From contig NW_021836772.1 of the NCBI RefSeq assembly GCF_006345805.1, positions 1 to 28,358 of the forward strand: a stretch of DNA of 28,358 nt. The letters are read 5' to 3'. The translations under genes were made by a program, and so were the position numbers. This document shows positions 823-23,747 of this stretch, in pieces. Origin of the DNA: Octopus sinensis. Its lineage: Eukaryota. The notes beneath the pieces are model-generated. The model was not told where the DNA came from and did no database searches. It saw only the letters and a list, made by a program, of their open reading frames with translations. The stretch's first letter is position 1. The number at the start of each line of letters is the position of its first letter.

Positions 823-1200
823 GACTTTCGCTTCCAATTTTACCCTTTCTCAGACGCTCTATTCTCCTCCTATTTGTGCTGTCACGACTACTATCTCCTC
901 CTTGTGGATGTTGTTATCTCTTGGAGACAGCAACAACACTAAATTGAGTAGCTTGCTCTCCAGATTTGTTAATATGCAAATGGAAAGATTTGTTTAATAA
1001 ATACATAATTTTAATTCGAAAATTATAATTCATTTTCTTATTTTGTGTCATAAAAATGAAATTTGAAAACAAATTATATTCTATAATTATTACGTTCTAG
1101 TCTACATTGCCACAATAATTTTACATTTATGCAAATTATAAAAAATTACCAAGCAGTTACGAAAGAAAACCCCACTTGGAAACATTCTCGCATGAATTTC

Positions 1201-1236
<36 letters not shown>

Positions 1237-1340
1237 AGCAAAAGACTGGAGATTCAGTATGTATATTATGTATATATATATATATATATAATATATATAT
1301 ATATATATAATATGTACACATATACATAAATTACATATAT

Positions 1341-1454
1341 GAAATTTTATTGCTCACAACGATCGTTTCGACCCCGTTTTGTATCGATCCCTCGCGGGTG
1401 GGCTGCAGTATAAATGACTGTGCTGCATCCCTCGGTGCAGAAGTGTCTCGTCAA
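1341..1454 (-). ncRNA. Degenerate type I hammerhead-like motif with long stem II (Penelope-type remnant)
   Basis: Minus strand: TTGACGA GAC ...78 nt including stem... GTC GAAAC GATC GTT GTG, followed by AGCAATAAAATT. Stem III is palindromic (ACGATCGT). The start of stem II is homologous to 24413-24516. Confidence 0.55.
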
Positions 1455-1656
1455 CTTCTATTATAAGAGGTATCCCGTTATTTGTCTCTATCATTTGCTA
1501 TATGCTTAACGATCACTGGGGAGTTCCTAAAGTAGATCCAGGGACAATTGTGTGATTACTGTAGATGACGCCAGGTAGACATAGGCAGTGAACCTGCTTC
1601 ATCGGCTTACTACTAGGAACCTACCTAATATTTAAATAATTATTCATATACAGTGA

Positions 1657-1975
1657 GGGCGCGTGGCTTAGTGGTTAGGGCATTCGGCTCATGATCGTAA
1701 GGTTGTGAGTTCGATTCCCGGCGACGCGTTGTGTCCTTGAGCAAGACACTTATTTCAACGTTGCTCCATCCACTCAGCTGGGCAAAAAATGAGTTTACTT
1801 GTATTTCAAAGGGTCAGCCTTGTCACTCTCTGTGTCACGCTGATTTTCCCCGAGAACTACGTTAAGGGTACACGTGTCTGTGGAATGCTCAGCCATTTGC
1901 ACACGTTAATTTCACGAGCAAGCTGTTCCGTTGATCGTATCAGCTGGGACCCTCGTCGTCGTAACCGGCGGAGTC
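1657..1975 (+). mobile_element. tRNA-derived SINE (family B)
   Basis: A box TGGCTTAGTGG at 1664-1674 and B box GAGTTCGATTCCC at 1707-1719, followed by a TGTGTCCTTGAGCAAGACACT central box. Its 3' end CTCGTCGTCGTAACCG recurs at 20817-20845. Confidence 0.9.
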
Positions 1976-1984
1976 TTTAGAGAT

Positions 1985-2165
1985 TCATATACATAAATAT
2001 ATATATAATATATATATACACACATATATATGTATACCTATATATAATATATATATACAACAATATATATAATATAATATATATACACTATATATATATA
2101 TATATTTATTTATATACACAATATATATATATATATATAGGTATACATATATAACTGTGTATTTA

Positions 2166-2200
<35 letters not shown>

Positions 2201-2201
2201 G

Positions 2202-2256
<55 letters not shown>

Positions 2257-2340
2257 TATATATATATTATATATAATATATTTATATATATATTATATAT
2301 ATATATGTATGTATATATATAATATATATATGTATATATA
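1985..2340. repeat. (TA)n-rich microsatellite
   Basis: Interrupted TA dinucleotide array. Confidence 0.95.
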
Positions 2341-2496
2341 ATTATAATAATAAGGTTTTTTTGCAACAAGTTGCTTAAACCACATACCGAAAATATTAGA
2401 ATAGCTGCTGCCAAGGGACTACTATTGACTGCTATTTCTAATATTTTCGGTATGTGGTTTAAGCACCTTGTTGCAAAAAACCCTTATTATTATAAT
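2341..2496. repeat. Long inverted repeat (65-bp arms, 25-nt spacer)
   Basis: 2341-2405 pairs with 2431-2496 with 2 mismatches and 1 bulge. Confidence 0.95.
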
Positions 2497-2702
2497 TATA
2501 TAAATTTTTACCGAATATGGTCCTTTTCCATACCGAAAAACTACTAGGTGAAATTTGTTGATTTTATTAAATTAATTATATTTCACCCTATACCTGTATA
2601 CATATATATATAGTTAAAGTTAATCTAAACAAAAAAACAAAAAAGACAACAACGCAAGGAGGTGGAACAATTAAAGTATTATTAGGCGCTCAGGAAAAAG
2701 GG

Positions 2703-2737
2703 GAAGACGTTTCGAGCGGAACTCTTCGTCGGAAACA
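2703..2737 (-). ncRNA. Degenerate minimal hammerhead-like core
   Basis: Minus strand: gttt CCGACGA A GAG ttccg CTC GAAAC GTC. Stem I 3' strand does not pair in this copy. Confidence 0.45.
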
Positions 2738-2799
2738 TAGGAGAAAGAAAAATCCCGAGGTGGGAGGACAGAGGAACAAAAATGCAAGTGGTCTCACGA

Positions 2800-3291
2800 G
2801 ATCAACATATTTATACACATATATATATACACATATATATACACATATATATACACATATATATATATACACATATATATACACATGTATACATATATAT
2901 GTGTATATATATACATATATATATAGATATATATATACATAGATTTATATGGATATATATATATATACACATATATATATGCACATATACATACATACAT
3001 ACATATATATATCGGCAGAAAGTCACAATTGTGACTGAAAATCCGAGCTTTTCGTGTATGACGTTTGATAAGTACCTTGTAGGAAACTCCCGGCATTTGA
3101 TTCACATTTATACCACTTTGATGATTAAAAATGATATATATATATACAAACAGATACACAATCTCTCTCTCTCCCTCTCTCTCCCTCTCTCTCACACACA
3201 CACACACATACACCCACATGTAAATACACACGCACTAAAGTATGTGTGTAGGCGTTTTCCTCCCTACAAAATACGTATATAAATACATACA

Positions 3292-3333
<42 letters not shown>

Positions 3334-3336
3334 CTA

Positions 3337-3378
<42 letters not shown>

Positions 3379-3409
3379 TATGTATATATATATAATATAT
3401 ATATACATA

Positions 3410-3479
<70 letters not shown>

Positions 3480-3490
3480 GTATATATATA

Positions 3491-3536
<46 letters not shown>

Positions 3537-3728
3537 GTGTCAACGCCGTTTCTTTTATGCAACACGATTACATTGATATTTCATACTTAAGAATAAGAAT
3601 AAATTTTTGCTCTTTTTATTATTTTTCATGTATAAAACATGAAATAAATCTCTGTAAACTGGGAAGAATCTTACATTTTCAGCTCCATAAATGCCTTTTC
3701 TTAACATCGTTCAATTTGTTTTCTACAC

Positions 3729-3760
<32 letters not shown>

Positions 3761-3934
3761 CCCTCCCGCACGCACACGCACATTTATATATGGCAATATT
3801 TCTTCTCGTTCTACTTCACGTTCGTGTTGTTATTGTTATTGTTGTTGCTGTTCTTCTCCTTTTTCTTCTTCAGCTTCTTCTTCTTCAGCTTCTTCTTCTT
3901 TAACTTCTTCACATTTTTACGTTGTATTTCTTTC

Positions 3935-3969
<35 letters not shown>

Positions 3970-4241
3970 TCTCTTTACCCTTTTCTCTTAACTGCATATT
4001 TTTCTTTTTTTCCCCTTTTCAACAAATTCCATCTGATCTTTATTCAGTGCTCATATTTCATTATACACACGTAGATATACATACATACATGCACTTATAA
4101 ATAAAGATATACACAGACGAAAACACACCACACATGCATATATATATACACACATATATGCATATATATATATATATATATATATACATACATGCACACG
4201 TTCAAACATATCATATATATATATATATGTGTGTGTGTATA

Positions 4242-4281
<40 letters not shown>

Positions 4282-4578
4282 CTTACATAATATATATATA
4301 TATATATAGATATATATATATATATATATTAATATATATATATATATACACATGCATAATCATATATAATATAATATATATATATATATAACATATAATA
4401 TATATATTTATATATATATATATATAATATTATTATACATACATACATATATATATATACATACATATTATATATACATAACTATATATATATATATACA
4501 TATATAATACATACATATATATATATAAATACATATTATATATATACATACCTATATATATTACATAACATATATACA

Positions 4579-4614
<36 letters not shown>

Positions 4615-4634
4615 CATACATATACCATACATAC

Positions 4635-4669
<35 letters not shown>

Positions 4670-4700
4670 TATAATTTATGAGTACACATACACACATGAA
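2800..4700. repeat. Compound microsatellite zone: (TA)n, (TACA)n, (CA)n, (CT)n, (CTT)n
   Basis: Directly visible low-complexity arrays with short unique spacers. Confidence 0.9.
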
Positions 4701-5163
4701 CTGAAGGTGTCGGAAGGGAGGGGTACGCGACAAGAGAGTTATCCTAGATGGTTAAAACTGATCAAATTTGGTGCAACCGAATGAGATTTCCATATTTTGC
4801 TAGAAGCGACACTGACTTCAAAAACCTTTCGGCTCCATAAACATGAATACCAGTAACATAATGTGGTTGGATGAATCAACGACACCTCTTATCACATACA
4901 ACTTGCTGCTTAGACTTGAGATTTTAATTCCTCTGTTTGTTTTATTTCTTTCTTTTTGCACATCGCCTCCTTTTTATATGGTTTCAGCGATTTAGTTGTC
5001 ATTCATCTTTAGCTCAAGACCGACTTTGATCAGACATGTACAAGATTTGGGTATATTGTCTTTTTAAGTGTCTTCAAGACACCGTTATTGAATGCGTGTC
5101 TTACATGTTCCAAACGGTAGAATGTAATTTAAAAGAGATTTGGTTATTATTTCTAGCAAGTCG

Positions 5164-20289: not shown

Positions 20290-20328
<39 letters not shown>

Positions 20329-20339
20329 GTATCGTGTGT

Positions 20340-20530
20340 GTGTATATTGTACATAAATCACAGCATGTGTATGTATATTGACTAACGCATTCATTTCCAC
20401 AATTCTCAACCGATTTTCACCAAACTTTACACACACATTACTTATGTCCCAAGGATGGGCATACACTATAGCATTTTGCCCAGAGCTCCCGCGTATATGG
20501 ACAAACCGTGAAAACAGTGGTTTAGACGTT
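20340..20530. mobile_element. Helentron-associated (HINE/DINE-like) core fragment
   Basis: ATTCTCAACCGATTTTCACCAAACTTTACACACACATTACTTATG is a CCGATTT..C..AAACTT core similar to those at 6100-6270, next to a (TA)n tract. Confidence 0.45.
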
Positions 20531-20748
20531 TTTTTTTTAAAACAAATTCGCTGTATGTTCATAGTTTTTTTTGTATGTAGGGTCTTCCATACCTTTTAAT
20601 CTATATAGTCGTATATTGGCATAAGAGAATATTTTTAGTGGCTTTCACATTTTTTTTGATTTATTATATATTTATATGTTGTAATTGTGTATTATTACTT
20701 GGTTAGAGAATTTTTATAAAAGCGAAAGGATTTTGTCTATTTATTTAG

Positions 20749-20795
<47 letters not shown>

Positions 20796-20845: not shown

Positions 20846-21332
20846 GCCACACGAACAGTGAGACTGTTCATACCTATCGTCTTATGCTTGGGATTTTACT
20901 GAGCTTTAAGTATTAATCTAATGCGTCTATAATATTTATTCCGAGCCGTTTCTTTCATCTATGTATTGAATTATGGCTGTGTCGAGTTCATTGATTCTTA
21001 ACGATTTGTCTGTGTTTGGTCTAATTCCTCTGCCTTTGTTTCTTAATCTAACATATTATTAATAGCTTTAATTCAATTTCCTTTTCTCTTTTCCAGCCTG
21101 GCTTTGCGCATTTTTGTCAATAGAATTTTATGTCACTTTCCCTATTATGTAATTATGTAATTTTATATCGCCAGCTGTTTGTTCATATATATATATATAT
21201 ATATATAATATATAATAATATCTATATATATATTATATATAATATATATATATATAATATATATATATATATATTACATATATATATAGATATGTACATA
21301 TATGTATATATATTATATATGTATATATATTG

Positions 21333-21427
<95 letters not shown>

Positions 21428-21671
21428 TATATATATATGATATATATATATATATTGTTATATATATGATAAATATCAAAGTGAGTTATATACAGTAGCG
21501 GTAAACATCGTGACGTATTTTTGCCATTTCAATATGGCTACCCCTAAGGGTGGATGCTACTGTAGTTTTTAGCCCCAGGAGGACACACTCCTCCAGCTGG
21601 CCATAGACACACTATCTGTGTCTGTCAGTATTTGCAAAGGGAAGTCATCCTTCCCGTCTTCACTTATGATA

Positions 21672-21715
21672 CACACGGACTCGAGTTTCGAGGTATTGAC
21701 CTTCGTCAGCGTGTG
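21672..21715 (-). ncRNA. Type I hammerhead ribozyme motif (left arm)
   Basis: cacacg CTGACGA AGGT caat ACCTC GAAAC TCGA GTC cgtgtg: perfect 6-bp stem I, palindromic stem III ACTCGAGT, GUC site; one G is missing at the stem II base. Confidence 0.8.
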
Positions 21716-21921
21716 ACAATAATAGTTGTCGCCGAGAATTAGATTTCCTTCACAAATACTTATACTTTTTCCAGCGCCCACTGTCGCTGATATTGAAAAA
21801 GTGAAATCAAAACAATGATAAATTGTTTGATTTCACTTTTTCAATATCAGCGACAGTGGGCGCTGGAAAAAGTATAAGTATTTGTGAAGGAAATCTAATT
21901 CTCGGCGACAACTATTATTGT

Positions 21922-21966
21922 CACACGCTGACGAGAGGTCAATACCTCGAAACTCGAGTCCTGTGT
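21922..21966 (+). ncRNA. Type I hammerhead ribozyme motif (right arm)
   Basis: cacacg CTGACGA GAGGT caat ACCTC GAAAC TCGA GTC ctgtgt: canonical core, perfect 5-bp stem II, GUC site; stem I has a 1-nt bulge. Confidence 0.85.
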
Positions 21967-22306
21967 ATCATAAGTTGAAGACGGGAAGGATGACTTCCCT
22001 TGCAAATACTGACAGGACACAGATAGTGTGTCTATGGCCAGCTGGAGGAGTGGTGTCCTCCTGGGGCTAAAAACTACAGTAGCATCCACCCTTAGGGGTT
22101 AGCCATATTGAAATGGCAAAAATACGTCACTATATATATATGCATATATATATATATATATATGATATATATATATATATGTATATTATATGTATATATA
22201 TATTATATAATATATATGTATATATATATATATGTATATAATATATATATATGATATATATATGTATATATATATGTATATATGTTATATATATGTAATA
22301 TATATG

Positions 22307-22369
<63 letters not shown>

Positions 22370-22721
22370 TAATATATCTATATATATGTTTGTGTGTCTA
22401 TCTCACTCTCACTCTCTCTCTCTCTCTCTCTCTGTATATATAGAGAGAGAAAGAGAGAGGGAGAGAGAGAGTATTTTGAGTAAACCATTGCGTGGTATTA
22501 AATTAAAACTTAAGGCCGAAGCTATGCAAAATGAATGAAATACAGAAATGAAAGAGAACAAAAGGTAATGTTTTATTTGCATTTATTCGATATTTTGGGT
22601 TGGAACTCCTTCATTAATTTGCGTGAAGAAATGAGAGAAGGAATAATGTTACCTTTTCCTCAGATTTGTTGGGGAGAGTAGTGACATGCGCAGACTGGCG
22701 TTGTTATAGTAACTATTATGT

Positions 22722-22933
22722 TTCGCGTAGTTCTTGTCAGTTTAGTGTTGGTTTCAGCTCATTAATTTGACTAGCCCATTGGATTCAAAAGTTACCTGTG
22801 CTATGTACGGTGGCTTTGATTGTTATTGCAAAGTTTCAGGGATTGGCACTTCAGCAGGTGTTTATGAACTGTGCTGTTTGGGTTCACCTGCTCTTTGATG
22901 ATGCGGAGTTTTCTGCTGGTGCGCCAGATCTGT
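22722..22933 (-). pseudogene. Penelope-like element GIY-YIG endonuclease remnant
   Basis: Minus strand: IWRTSRKLRIIKEQVNPNSTVHKHLLKCQS, then after a frameshift NFAITIKATVHSTGNF*IQWASQINELKPTLN*QELRE. This matches the GIY-YIG pattern T.R.L..RIKEH...S.V.KH...C ... I..LKP.LN. Confidence 0.75.
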
Positions 22934-23295
22934 CTGGAAGAGAGGAAAAGTGAATTAAAGACGTTAGTGATAAATATGTTAGCTTAAGAATCACAAGTAG
23001 GTAAATTAGATTACACACTGATAAATAGTTAAGAATCAATGATCTCAATATAATAACAATTCAATATATAGATGAAAGAAATGTCGAGGAATAATATTAT
23101 AGACACGTTAGATTAATACTTAAAATTTAAATACTTAAAACTTCGGGTTCTAATCCCGGAAATATCAAAGAAATAAGCTAAAACTTTACCCGTTATTTTG
23201 TTTTAACTTATGTTTCATCCCTTTTGGCTTTGTTTTGGCCTTTTCCTTTTCCCCCTTCCTGCTTCCCTCTTCTTTTATTTTATGTATTTGTATCC

Positions 23296-23399
23296 ACTCT
23301 GATGAAGCTCCATGTACGAGATCGGATGTGCTATAAAGATAACGAATATTATTCTCATAATTTTCTTTGGCGACACCGGCAGCAGAAACAGCTGTAAGT
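23296..23399 (+). ncRNA. Type I hammerhead-like motif with 79-nt stem II region
   Basis: ACT CTGATGA aGCT ...AGCa GAAAC AGCT GTA AGT: canonical core, palindromic ACAGCTGT, GUA site, 3-bp stem I (ACT/AGT). Confidence 0.6.
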
Positions 23400-23512
23400 A
23401 ATGTTCAAGTTTTGTATTAGAAAATATTTAACCAATGGTAATCAATTTTTTTGTTGATCAAAAGTTTTCTCCATTTTCTGCTTATTTTAAATTATATATA
23501 TATATATAATAT

Positions 23513-23559
<47 letters not shown>

Positions 23560-23747
23560 TTAAATAATGAGGGAGATAAATTAATATTAATTTAATTAAC
23601 ATCAATCTAAAACCAGTAGCCTAGCATACAAAAATCTGAAAAATCAGAGAAAATTCTAATACATGTGTATATTCAAAGGCAAGACCACTAGGTAGTCGGC
23701 CGTATGCTAGAAATAGATCACCAACGATCAAACTACATATACACATG

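What the first reader, a model, noticed from the sequence alone, without database searches (positions are those of the whole stretch)
21510..22130. 621-bp palindrome carrying two back-to-back hammerhead ribozymes
Each arm holds a type I HHR pointing away from the 5-nt centre. Combining the arms gives a textbook motif: cacacg CUGACGA GAGGU caau ACCUC GAAAC UCGA GUC^ cgugug. Transcription in either direction would make one sense ribozyme preceded by its own antisense, so a ~300-bp hairpin would compete with self-cleavage. That would be a built-in switch and an ADAR/siRNA substrate. Inverted terminal repeats with HHRs are known for Penelope-like elements, and a GIY-YIG remnant lies about 600 bp away. 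An ORF-less palindromic unit could be a foldback retrozyme-like element (inference). The arms differ only by 8 single-base indels, which looks like long-read consensus error, so they may be identical and very young.
Basis: partly seen in the sequence, partly recalled or inferred. Interest (0 to 1): 0.88.

Follow-up and report, generated by a model that had tools for sequence, protein, structure and literature searches.

The report
Head-to-head hammerhead retrozyme insertion
The palindrome is real, but it is one ordinary insertion of a young 353-base, ribozyme-carrying, non-coding retroelement into a (TA)n microsatellite, and its two-armed shape is the usual footprint left by Penelope-like retrotransposon machinery rather than a special foldback element or RNA switch.

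Summary
The palindrome exists, and each arm carries an outward-pointing type I hammerhead. Its true extent is 21466-22130, because the left arm has 44 extra bases. The "centre" is a 2-nt microhomology junction, not a loop.

The arm is one copy of a 353-nt repeat. This genome holds at least 250 insertion loci and hundreds of units of it, only about 0.3% diverged. All 20 two-armed loci examined share one layout:
- (TA)n, then a minus-strand array, then a plus-strand array, then (TA)n.
- 3' ends face outward and 5'-truncated ends meet at a junction that differs from locus to locus.
- Exactly one end carries a 44-50-nt "tail".

These are the published hallmarks of Penelope-like element (PLE) integration. 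The unit itself fits the description of metazoan non-LTR retrozymes.

Both window arms share a substitution seen in no other sampled copy, so they come from one template. Their 8 indels are each private to one arm and look like consensus errors.

No GIY-YIG remnant was found. Each strand carries only one sense ribozyme, so this locus cannot release a unit-length RNA. The hairpin is a by-product, not a designed switch. This is a new member of a known kind.

The parts
21184..21465 (.). Left part of the (TA)n-rich microsatellite that served as the target
   Evidence: All 40 ends of the 20 loci examined abut (TA)n.
21466..21509 (-). 'Tail': a 44-nt 3' extension of the left arm, ending at terminus B (...TTTGATATTTATCA|TATATA in sense orientation). 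It is present on this side only.
   Evidence: It matches the inter-unit segment of the tandem arrays. Exactly one tail-bearing end was found in 20/20 loci.
21466..21823 (-). Left arm: one full 353-nt unit plus 8 nt, sense strand on the minus strand, 3' end outward
   Evidence: alignment. It differs from the consensus by 5 private single-base indels in the scored columns, one further deletion in the tail (read by eye), and 1 substitution shared with the right arm.
21672..21715 (-). Left-arm type I hammerhead. It has a 1-nt deletion in stem II as assembled (GAGGU reads AGGU). Predicted cleavage after 21678.
   Evidence: Not reported by Rfam.
21822..21823 (.). Inversion junction: the 5' ends of the two arms meet with a 2-nt microhomology, 'at'
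   Evidence: read against the unit.
21822..22130 (+). Right arm: 309 nt of the unit, 5'-truncated by about 44 nt, ending at tail-less terminus A (...AAATACGTCAC|TATATA)
   Evidence: Three private indels and the shared substitution.
21922..21966 (+). Right-arm type I hammerhead. It has a 1-nt deletion in the 3' strand of stem I as assembled. Predicted cleavage after 21960.
   Evidence: Rfam RF00163, 28.2 bits, E 1e-4. The consensus copy scores 32.2 bits.
22131..22375 (.). Right part of the (TA)n-rich target microsatellite
21702..21702 (.). Private substitution (sense ACTATTATTG where the family has ACTATGATTG), left-arm copy. Its mirror copy lies at about 21914 in the right arm.
   Evidence: The pattern with this variant occurs only in the window, twice. 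The family allele was found in all of about 150 other sampled units.

Best explanation
The feature is a single, recent insertion of a non-autonomous, non-coding retroelement of the 'non-LTR retrozyme' type. The unit is 353 nt, 43% GC, and carries one type I hammerhead.

The normal life cycle is taken from the literature and was not tested here. Tandem copies are transcribed, the hammerheads cut the multimer into unit-length RNAs, and these can circularise. The hammerheads probably pair as dimers through the 8-nt palindrome ACUCGAGU that forms helix III. A reverse transcriptase supplied in trans then copies the RNA into a new site.

The insertion footprint is shown by the data. The target is a (TA)n microsatellite. 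Two cDNA arms grow inward from the two cut ends, so both 3' ends face outward. The arms are 5'-truncated and are joined in the middle by microhomology, filler or stutter. One arm starts at site A (...ACGTCAC). The other starts at site B, 44-50 nt further along the template; this extra stretch is the 'tail'.

This is the architecture described for Penelope-like elements (PLEs). By inference, the mobiliser is one of this genome's many RT + GIY-YIG PLEs, which also sit in (TA)n.

In the window each arm happens to be about one unit long, and the two 5' ends lie within 6 nt of each other, so the locus looks like a clean palindrome. The back-to-back ribozymes and the potential 300-bp hairpin RNA are by-products. 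With one sense ribozyme per strand, the locus cannot release a monomer and is probably a dead-end copy.
For: Family and copy number:
- The arm has at least 138 scored copies at 94-99% identity, mostly in head-to-tail arrays of period 353.
- There are 1137 hits to the ribozyme pattern against 0 for the reversed control.
- There are 251 tail-less termini and about 210 tail-bearing termini, all running into TA repeats.

Architecture:
- The window and 19 other two-armed loci all read (TA)n | minus arm(s) | plus arm(s) | (TA)n, never the converse.
- Each has exactly one tail-bearing end and one tail-less end. The tail is on the left in 9 loci and on the right in 11.
- Inner junctions differ from locus to locus and show microhomology, filler and short stutter duplications.
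- One-armed 5'-truncated arrays abut (TA)n directly.

One template per insertion:
- Both window arms share a substitution absent from about 150 other units.
- The G/A marker at alignment column 88 is concordant between arms in 12 informative loci. One locus is mixed.

Youth: 20 chromosomal units differ from their consensus by 0.28% substitutions and 0.17% indels.

Ribozyme and RNA:
- The hammerhead core is complete, scoring 32.2 bits, E 2.4e-6.
- Helix I extends into a long closing stem.
- The circular fold of the unit is -117 kcal/mol against -83 +/- 6 for shuffles (z = -5.8), with 63% of bases paired.

Mobiliser candidates:
- The genome has at least 147 scored GIY-YIG matches out of 4846 candidates.
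- Intact 781-aa RT + GIY-YIG frames exist.
- The one element read at both ends is bounded by (TA)n, and (TA)n follows within 30 nt of the 3' end in 3 of 5 copies checked.

Literature:
- PLE hallmarks are partial tandems, an adjacent inverted 5'-truncated copy, a 30-40-bp tail at one end only, and a (TA)n bias (PMC8557442).
- Non-LTR retrozymes are tandem repeats of about 150-450 bp, under 45% GC, with type I hammerheads (PMC7229834).
- Retrozymes have been proposed to be non-autonomous PLE derivatives (preprint 10.64898/2026.07.22.740005).
Against: - No autonomous PLE sharing sequence with the unit was found. The 781-aa PLE's 3' end looks unrelated. Rfam finds no hammerhead in five PLE loci at E <= 0.01, and the hammerhead pattern is absent from twelve other GIY-YIG loci.
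- The hammerhead scores just below Rfam's gathering threshold even in intact copies.
- No expression, circular RNA or cleavage data could be obtained.
- The strict A/B pairing of termini has no worked-out mechanism.
- Three of 19 independent junctions are near-symmetric, against about 0.6 expected. Some arms may therefore arise by snap-back rather than by two independent primings.
- Only one assembly was available, so there is no empty-site allele.
Confidence: 0.8

Rival explanations
1. Foldback retrozyme with a built-in switch. The palindrome itself is the functional, propagating unit. Its hairpin regulates self-cleavage and feeds ADAR or siRNA pathways.
For: The hairpin is thermodynamically overwhelming, at -580 kcal/mol with the ribozyme fully paired to its antisense. 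Two-armed loci are common in the family.
Against: Junction positions differ at every independent locus and arm lengths are unequal, from 0.1 to 7 units. The repeated unit is a direct 353-nt repeat, and one-armed loci exist. No two independent loci share a palindrome centre. A transcript from the window has only one sense ribozyme, so no unit can be excised.
Confidence: 0.03
2. Assembly artefact: a fold-back (missed-adapter or chimeric) long read produced a false palindrome on a poorly polished, unplaced 28-kb contig.
For: The window is an entire unplaced contig. Its arms carry 6-9 times more indels than chromosomal copies. No allelic copy exists elsewhere in the assembly.
Against: The mirror symmetry stops exactly at the element's ends. 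One side has the 44-nt tail and the other does not. The flanks beyond the TA tracts are not mirror images; there is only a displaced inverted repeat of about 78% identity. The same architecture, with different junctions, is present at 19 other loci on chromosome-scale contigs.
Confidence: 0.04
3. Satellite DNA with local inversions. The repeat expanded and inverted by DNA-level processes (unequal exchange, replication template switching), not by retrotransposition.
For: The copies are tandem and near-identical. One locus (L033) shows a whole block duplicated in tandem. Hammerhead satellites are known in newts (cited in PMC7229834).
Against: There are about 250 dispersed short arrays of 1-7 units, each in its own (TA)n tract, with the same two sharply defined termini. 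Truncation always affects the same (5') side, and the orientation is always divergent. Variants private to a locus are shared by both arms.
Confidence: 0.05
4. The same retroelement, but mobilised by a non-PLE reverse transcriptase, for example a LINE, with L1-type twin priming producing the inverted arm.
For: Twin priming by LINE-1 gives inverted 5' segments with 3' ends outward (established knowledge). No sequence link to a PLE was found here.
Against: There is no poly(A) or LINE-type tail. The strict (TA)n target, the one-sided 44-50-nt tail and the tandem multimers together match the PLE description, not the LINE one. Co-resident, intact PLEs sit in (TA)n.
Confidence: 0.08

Closest known systems
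Metazoan non-LTR retrozymes (Cervera & de la Pena 2020, PMC7229834; review PMC7761336)
   Same: Head-to-tail repeats of a few hundred bp (353 here). Low GC (43%). One type I hammerhead per unit, with a weak 2-bp helix III capped by a palindromic tetraloop. Helix I closes a highly self-paired monomer. No ORF, LTR, PBS or PPT.
   Different: Expression and circular RNA were not tested here. In the papers I could search, retrozyme descriptions do not mention inverted arms, a one-sided tail or a (TA)n target. Those features are documented here for this family.
Penelope-like element insertion architecture (Craig et al. 2021, PMC8557442; Evgen'ev & Arkhipova 2005 as cited there)
   Same: Partial or multiple tandems. 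An adjacent inverted 5'-truncated copy. An extension ('tail') at one end only. Insertion into (TA)n microsatellites. A hammerhead in the repeated part.
   Different: There is no RT/EN ORF, so the element is non-autonomous. The tail is 44-50 nt rather than 30-40. The hammerhead is a fuller type I motif with helix III, not the minimal PLE variant. No sequence similarity to a resident PLE was found.
LINE-1 twin-priming inversions (Ostertag & Kazazian 2001; from my own knowledge)
   Same: Two cDNAs are primed from the two target 3' ends. The 3' ends face outward, and the 5' ends are joined by microhomology.
   Different: In L1 the two arms are different parts of a unique RNA, and one end carries poly(A). 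Here the template is repetitive or circular, so the arms are copies of each other, and the termini are two fixed sites 44-50 nt apart.
Non-autonomous Chlamys PLE derivatives such as MRC1 in Chlamydomonas (PMC8557442)
   Same: Short non-coding elements that give pLTR-like, multicopy head-to-tail insertions through PLE machinery.
   Different: They share their 3' ends with autonomous partners and lack canonical hammerheads. Here a hammerhead is present and no partner is identified.
Newt and salamander satellite 2 hammerhead repeats (cited in PMC7229834)
   Same: Tandem repeats of about 330-350 bp carrying type I hammerheads with a weak helix III that favours dimeric cleavage.
   Different: Those form large satellite blocks. 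This family consists of about 250 dispersed, very short arrays with defined termini in (TA)n.

Membership tests
Hammerhead ribozyme, type I | Conserved core CUGANGA ... GAAA ... UH^ with helices I, II and III, and helix I open | tested here: met
   The family consensus reads cacacg-CUGACGA-GAGGU-caau-ACCUC-GAAAC-UCGA-GUC^cgugug. Rfam RF00163 aligns it end to end.
Hammerhead ribozyme, type I | Score at or above Rfam's curated gathering threshold (34 bits) | tested here: not met
   32.2 bits for an intact copy, 28.2 for the window's right arm, and no report for the left arm. The shortfall is small and comes from stem II and loop letters, not the core.
Hammerhead ribozyme, type I | Self-cleavage at GUC^ | not testable with these tools
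   This needs in vitro transcription of monomer and dimer.
Non-LTR retrozyme | Head-to-tail tandem repeats of about 150-450 bp, each with a type I hammerhead | tested here: met
   Period 353, with 1-7 units per arm.
Non-LTR retrozyme | Low GC (<45%) and a highly self-paired monomer | tested here: met
   GC 42.8%. The circular MFE is -117 kcal/mol, z = -5.8 against shuffles, with 63% of bases paired. This is prediction only.
Non-LTR retrozyme | No ORF, LTR, PBS or PPT | tested here: met
   The longest frames across the arms are 87 aa or less and are mirror images of each other. The unit has no terminal repeats.
Non-LTR retrozyme | Expressed as unit-length linear and circular RNA | not testable with these tools
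   No transcriptome was accessible.
PLE-type insertion (non-autonomous PLE derivative) | Partial or multiple tandem copies | tested here: met
PLE-type insertion (non-autonomous PLE derivative) | An inverted 5'-truncated copy adjacent at the 5' side | tested here: met
   20/20 two-armed loci are divergent, with variable inner truncation points.
PLE-type insertion (non-autonomous PLE derivative) | An extension ('tail') at one end only | tested here: met
   Exactly one tail-bearing end in 20/20 loci. The tail is 44-50 nt, against the published 30-40.
PLE-type insertion (non-autonomous PLE derivative) | Microsatellite, (TA)n, insertion bias | tested here: met
   40/40 ends examined abut (TA)n. Genome-wide counts of termini followed by TA repeats are 251 and about 210.
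PLE-type insertion (non-autonomous PLE derivative) | Sequence similarity to an autonomous PLE (pLTR or 3' end) | tested here: inconclusive
   None was seen in the five full PLE loci and twelve GIY-YIG loci fetched.
Autonomous Penelope-like element | An ORF with RT and GIY-YIG endonuclease in or next to the feature | tested here: not met
   No RT or GIY-YIG signal anywhere in the window.
Foldback / palindromic transposon | The same inverted-repeat unit, with the same centre, propagated to many loci | tested here: not met
   Each independent locus has a different junction. The only identical pair (L031/L040) also shares its flanks, so it is a duplication.

The most novel reading that the evidence does not exclude
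The strict pairing of termini was seen in 20/20 two-armed loci: one arm starts at site A and the other at site B, 44-50 nt downstream. Variants private to a locus are shared by both arms. Together these could mean that both 3' ends of the cut (TA)n target prime at a fixed spacing on one circular or multimeric retrozyme RNA held by the PLE enzyme.

If so, this very young family of about 250 loci would be a natural footprint dataset. It could explain how PLEs make their unexplained tandem/inverted insertions and 'tails'. It would also give direct structural proof that animal retrozymes are mobilised by PLEs. A further possibility is that the many two-armed loci make long hairpin RNAs that feed silencing or editing of the family.
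Probability: 0.25. Interest if true: 0.6.

Novelty: new member of a known kind. Interest (0 to 1): 0.4.

Why it matters
The finding is not a new kind of ribozyme switch. It does document a very young, apparently active hammerhead retrozyme family in a large invertebrate-type genome.

In the papers I could search, inverted arms, a one-sided tail and a (TA)n target are reported for Penelope-like elements but not for retrozymes. Here a retrozyme's insertion sites carry all of them. That is independent, structural support for the proposal that animal retrozymes are non-autonomous PLE passengers.

The strict A/B terminus rule also gives a concrete constraint on the still unknown PLE integration mechanism.

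For genome annotators, near-perfect palindromes inside (TA)n tracts in such genomes should be read as PLE-type insertions, not as assembly errors or foldback elements.

Tried and rejected
- **Rfam at gathering thresholds:** no hit on the window or on an intact array. The hammerhead appears only with E-value thresholds. The many miRNA 'hits' merely reflect the long hairpin.
- **GIY-YIG remnant:** a regex, Pfam on flank frames and tblastn with the genome's own PLE protein were all negative.
- **Autonomous partner:** the hammerhead pattern is absent from 12 GIY-YIG loci, and Rfam finds nothing in 5 PLE loci.
- **Allelic or empty site:** both flanks match only interspersed repeats elsewhere, with no second allele.
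- **Organism:** the assembly statistics recall a published octopus assembly, from memory only. One literature search and an exact-sequence look-up of the PLE protein did not confirm this, so the organism is left unnamed.
- **Python on fetched loci:** loci of this genome are not written to file. Family statistics were therefore taken from alignments A2 and A3.
- **Truncation hot spot:** I considered that the inner truncation points cluster at the ribozyme (17 of 46 fall at q99-157). The enrichment is mild, and I do not rely on it.

Full report

Yes, in its core. Window 21510-21816 is the reverse complement of 21822-22130, with no substitutions and 7 single-base indels; an eighth lies beside the centre. 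Both sides are flanked by long (TA)n-rich tracts. A palindrome of this length cannot be chance.

Each arm carries a hammerhead motif reading outward. GUC^ falls at 21958-21960 on the plus strand and at 21680-21678 on the minus strand. Rfam gives nothing at gathering thresholds. With E-value thresholds it reports Hammerhead_1 for the right arm only, at 21923-21966 with 28.2 bits and E 1e-4; the gathering score is 34. The miRNA-family 'hits' in that call merely reflect the long hairpin.

**2. What the arm is.**

Searching the window's own genome (2.72 Gb, 13,516 contigs; the window is a whole unplaced contig) with the right arm gave at least 138 scored copies at 94-99% identity. Most sit in head-to-tail arrays with a 353-bp period.

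Reading one array and aligning 20 chromosomal units gave the following:
- The unit is 353 nt and 43% GC.
- An intact copy scores 32.2 bits, E 2.4e-6, still just under the gathering score.
- Helix III is only A-U and C-G capped by UCGA, so ACUCGAGU is an 8-nt palindrome. This is the arrangement that favours dimeric hammerheads in tandem transcripts, as described for newt, salamander and PLE ribozymes (PMC7229834, PMC7761336).
- Helix I continues into a long stem that closes the rest of the unit.
- The predicted circular fold is -117 kcal/mol against -83 +/- 6 for shuffles (z = -5.8), with 63% of bases paired.

A looser ribozyme pattern has 1137 matches in the genome and none for the reversed control. 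It reveals several sister families; for example, stem II AGGU/ACCU is replaced by GGGU/ACCC.

**3. The palindrome is a family-wide insertion architecture.**

I fetched 20 loci with flanks and lined up both ends of 19 of them plus the window. All 20 loci share these features:
- The order is (TA)n | minus-strand arm | plus-strand arm | (TA)n, so the 3' ends of the sense strand always point outward.
- The inner copies are 5'-truncated.
- Exactly one outer end stops at site A (...AAATACGTCAC or ...CACGA, then TATATA).
- The other end runs 44-50 nt further into the next unit, to site B (...TTTATCAT/T/TGT/TGTT, then ATATA).
- The tail-bearing side is left in 9 loci and right in 11.

The left arm is therefore 21466-21823 (a full unit plus 8 nt). 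The right arm is 21822-22130. The '5-nt centre' is just the end of the left arm, overlapping the start of the right arm by 'at'.

Genome-wide there are 251 tail-less termini and about 210 tail-bearing termini followed by TA repeats (reverse-strand hits of the second pattern are counted up to three times). That implies roughly 250 insertion loci.

Inner junctions differ between loci:
- q110/111 is a perfect palindrome.
- q156/156 carries a 10-nt stutter.
- Others are q70/148, q120/189, q257/134, q235/65 and so on.
- They show microhomology, filler and short duplications.

One-armed loci, which are simple 5'-truncated arrays abutting (TA)n, also exist. Eight of ten of these, judged, end at site A.

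**4. Both arms come from one template, and the family is young.**

Both window arms carry ACTATTATTG where all of about 150 other sampled units have ACTATGATTG. A common G/A marker at alignment column 88 is concordant between the two arms in 12 informative loci. These include the two A-allele loci where both arms are informative, L033 and L044. One locus, L035, is mixed.

The chromosomal units differ from their consensus by 0.28% substitutions and 0.17% indels, and 6 of 20 are identical to it. The window arms have 5 and 3 indels (1.6% and 1.0%). Each is private to one arm and absent from every other copy. This fits poor consensus quality on an unplaced contig.

**5. Not an assembly fold-back.**

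Three observations argue against it:
- Mirror symmetry ends exactly at the element's termini, and it does so asymmetrically, with a tail on one side only.
- Beyond the TA tracts the flanks are not mirror images. They share only a displaced, locus-specific inverted repeat of about 200 nt and about 78% identity.
- The same architecture, with other junctions, occurs on chromosome-scale contigs.

No second allele or empty site exists in this assembly.

**6. Link to Penelope-like elements.**

Craig et al. 2021 (PMC8557442) list the PLE hallmarks:
- partial tandems;
- an adjacent inverted 5'-truncated copy;
- a 30-40-bp tail, often at one end only;
- a (TA)n insertion bias;
- hammerheads in the repeated region;
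- non-autonomous derivatives that give multicopy head-to-tail insertions.

All of these except the ORF are met here.

The genome holds at least 147 scored GIY-YIG matches out of 4846 candidates, with open frames up to 883 aa. [quoted passage not shown] The one element read at both ends is bounded by (TA)n, and (TA)n follows within 30 nt of the 3' end in 3 of 5 copies checked.

The claimed GIY-YIG remnant near the palindrome was not found by regex, Pfam or tblastn.

**7. How it most likely works.**

Shown by the data:
- The unit, its ribozyme core, the termini, the (TA)n target, the divergent arms and the single template per insertion.

Inferred from the literature:
- Tandem transcripts self-cleave, probably via dimeric hammerheads, into 353-nt RNAs that circularise.
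- A PLE RT/EN cuts (TA)n.
- Both target 3' ends prime cDNA synthesis on a multimeric or circular template (twin-priming-like).
- The cDNAs are joined in the middle.

The 20/20 pairing of one A end with one B end would have a probability of about 1e-6 if the ends were independent. It suggests a fixed spacing of the two priming events on one template complex. The mechanism is unresolved. Three near-symmetric junctions among 19 (the window is one) leave room for snap-back in some events.

**8. Consequences for the window locus.**

A transcript through the locus in either direction contains one sense ribozyme preceded by its antisense. One sense ribozyme per strand cannot excise a unit, and dimeric helix III cannot form in cis. 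The locus is best seen as a dead-end by-product, not a switch. Whether such hairpins feed small-RNA or editing pathways was not testable.

**9. Novelty.**

The element is a new member of known kinds: a non-LTR retrozyme with a PLE-type insertion. The retrozyme papers I could search do not mention inverted arms, tails or (TA)n targets. A 2026 preprint argues from phylogeny that vertebrate retrozymes derive from PLEs. The footprints documented here add structural support from a different animal genome, and they give a sharp constraint on PLE integration: paired A/B termini and one template for both arms.

Noticed in passing
L063:5764-6868 (G000 C6, about 12.735 Mb): A second, unrelated hammerhead-bearing repeat with a unit of about 535 nt. 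Its hammerhead is uuuugg-CUGACGAG, then a stem II closed by GCUA/UAGC around a long (~50-nt) insertion, then GAAAC-AAUU-GUC^ccaaaa. It is also arranged as a minus arm next to a plus arm inside a (TA)n tract, just downstream of an intact PLE. Rfam misses it.
   Followed up: partly
window 23240-23567: A member of an abundant older interspersed repeat (78-88% identity) that ends in (TA)n. Elsewhere in the genome it repeatedly occurs as divergent (-,+) pairs a few hundred bp apart. It is probably another PLE-type non-autonomous family.
   Followed up: partly
window ~20905-21110 and ~22918-23125: A locus-specific inverted repeat of about 200 nt and about 78% identity brackets the whole TA tract and retrozyme, but it is not centred on them. 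Its origin is unknown.
   Followed up: partly
window 20292-20750: An interspersed repeat of about 400 nt, with thousands of candidate copies at 82-86% identity (SINE-like).
   Followed up: no
L031 (C18:23.241 Mb) and L040 (C2:199.373 Mb): Two loci with the same arm structure, the same junction and identical TA-rich flanks. This is either a segmental duplication or assembly redundancy, so the 20 loci are 19 independent ones.
   Followed up: partly
L033 (C9:28.4449-28.4473 Mb): A complete two-armed insertion (-,-,+truncated,+) is present twice in tandem with a period of about 1267 bp. This points to post-insertion duplication of the whole block.
   Followed up: no
L063:~910-5040, and L064, L067, L055, L062: A PLE family with an intact 781-aa RT + C-terminal GIY-YIG frame at many loci, with identical domain scores. 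The element is bounded by (TA)n. Its 3' UTR holds five tandem repeats of about 60 nt containing TGATGACGTC. No canonical hammerhead was detected.
   Followed up: partly
L034:4760-4775 and L047:2762-2775: In two independent loci the plus arm's 5' end falls at the same base, starting ATGGCAAAAATACG, about 18 nt before site A. This may be a preferred stop or switch point for the reverse transcriptase.
   Followed up: no
unit sites A and B (e.g. window 22124-22130 and 21466-21475): The bases that follow both termini in the tandem unit are similar: GAUGUGUU after A and AUUGUUUG after B. Neither is TA-rich, so simple annealing of a (TA)n primer does not explain where cDNA synthesis starts.
   Followed up: no
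L031:1780-1830 and 3790-3835: The TA tract hosting that insertion is itself flanked on both sides by the same SINE-like end, ...GGAAA(G/A)CGGACGTTAAA(T/C)GATGATGATG. This suggests that many (TA)n targets in this genome are microsatellites grown from SINE tails.
   Followed up: no
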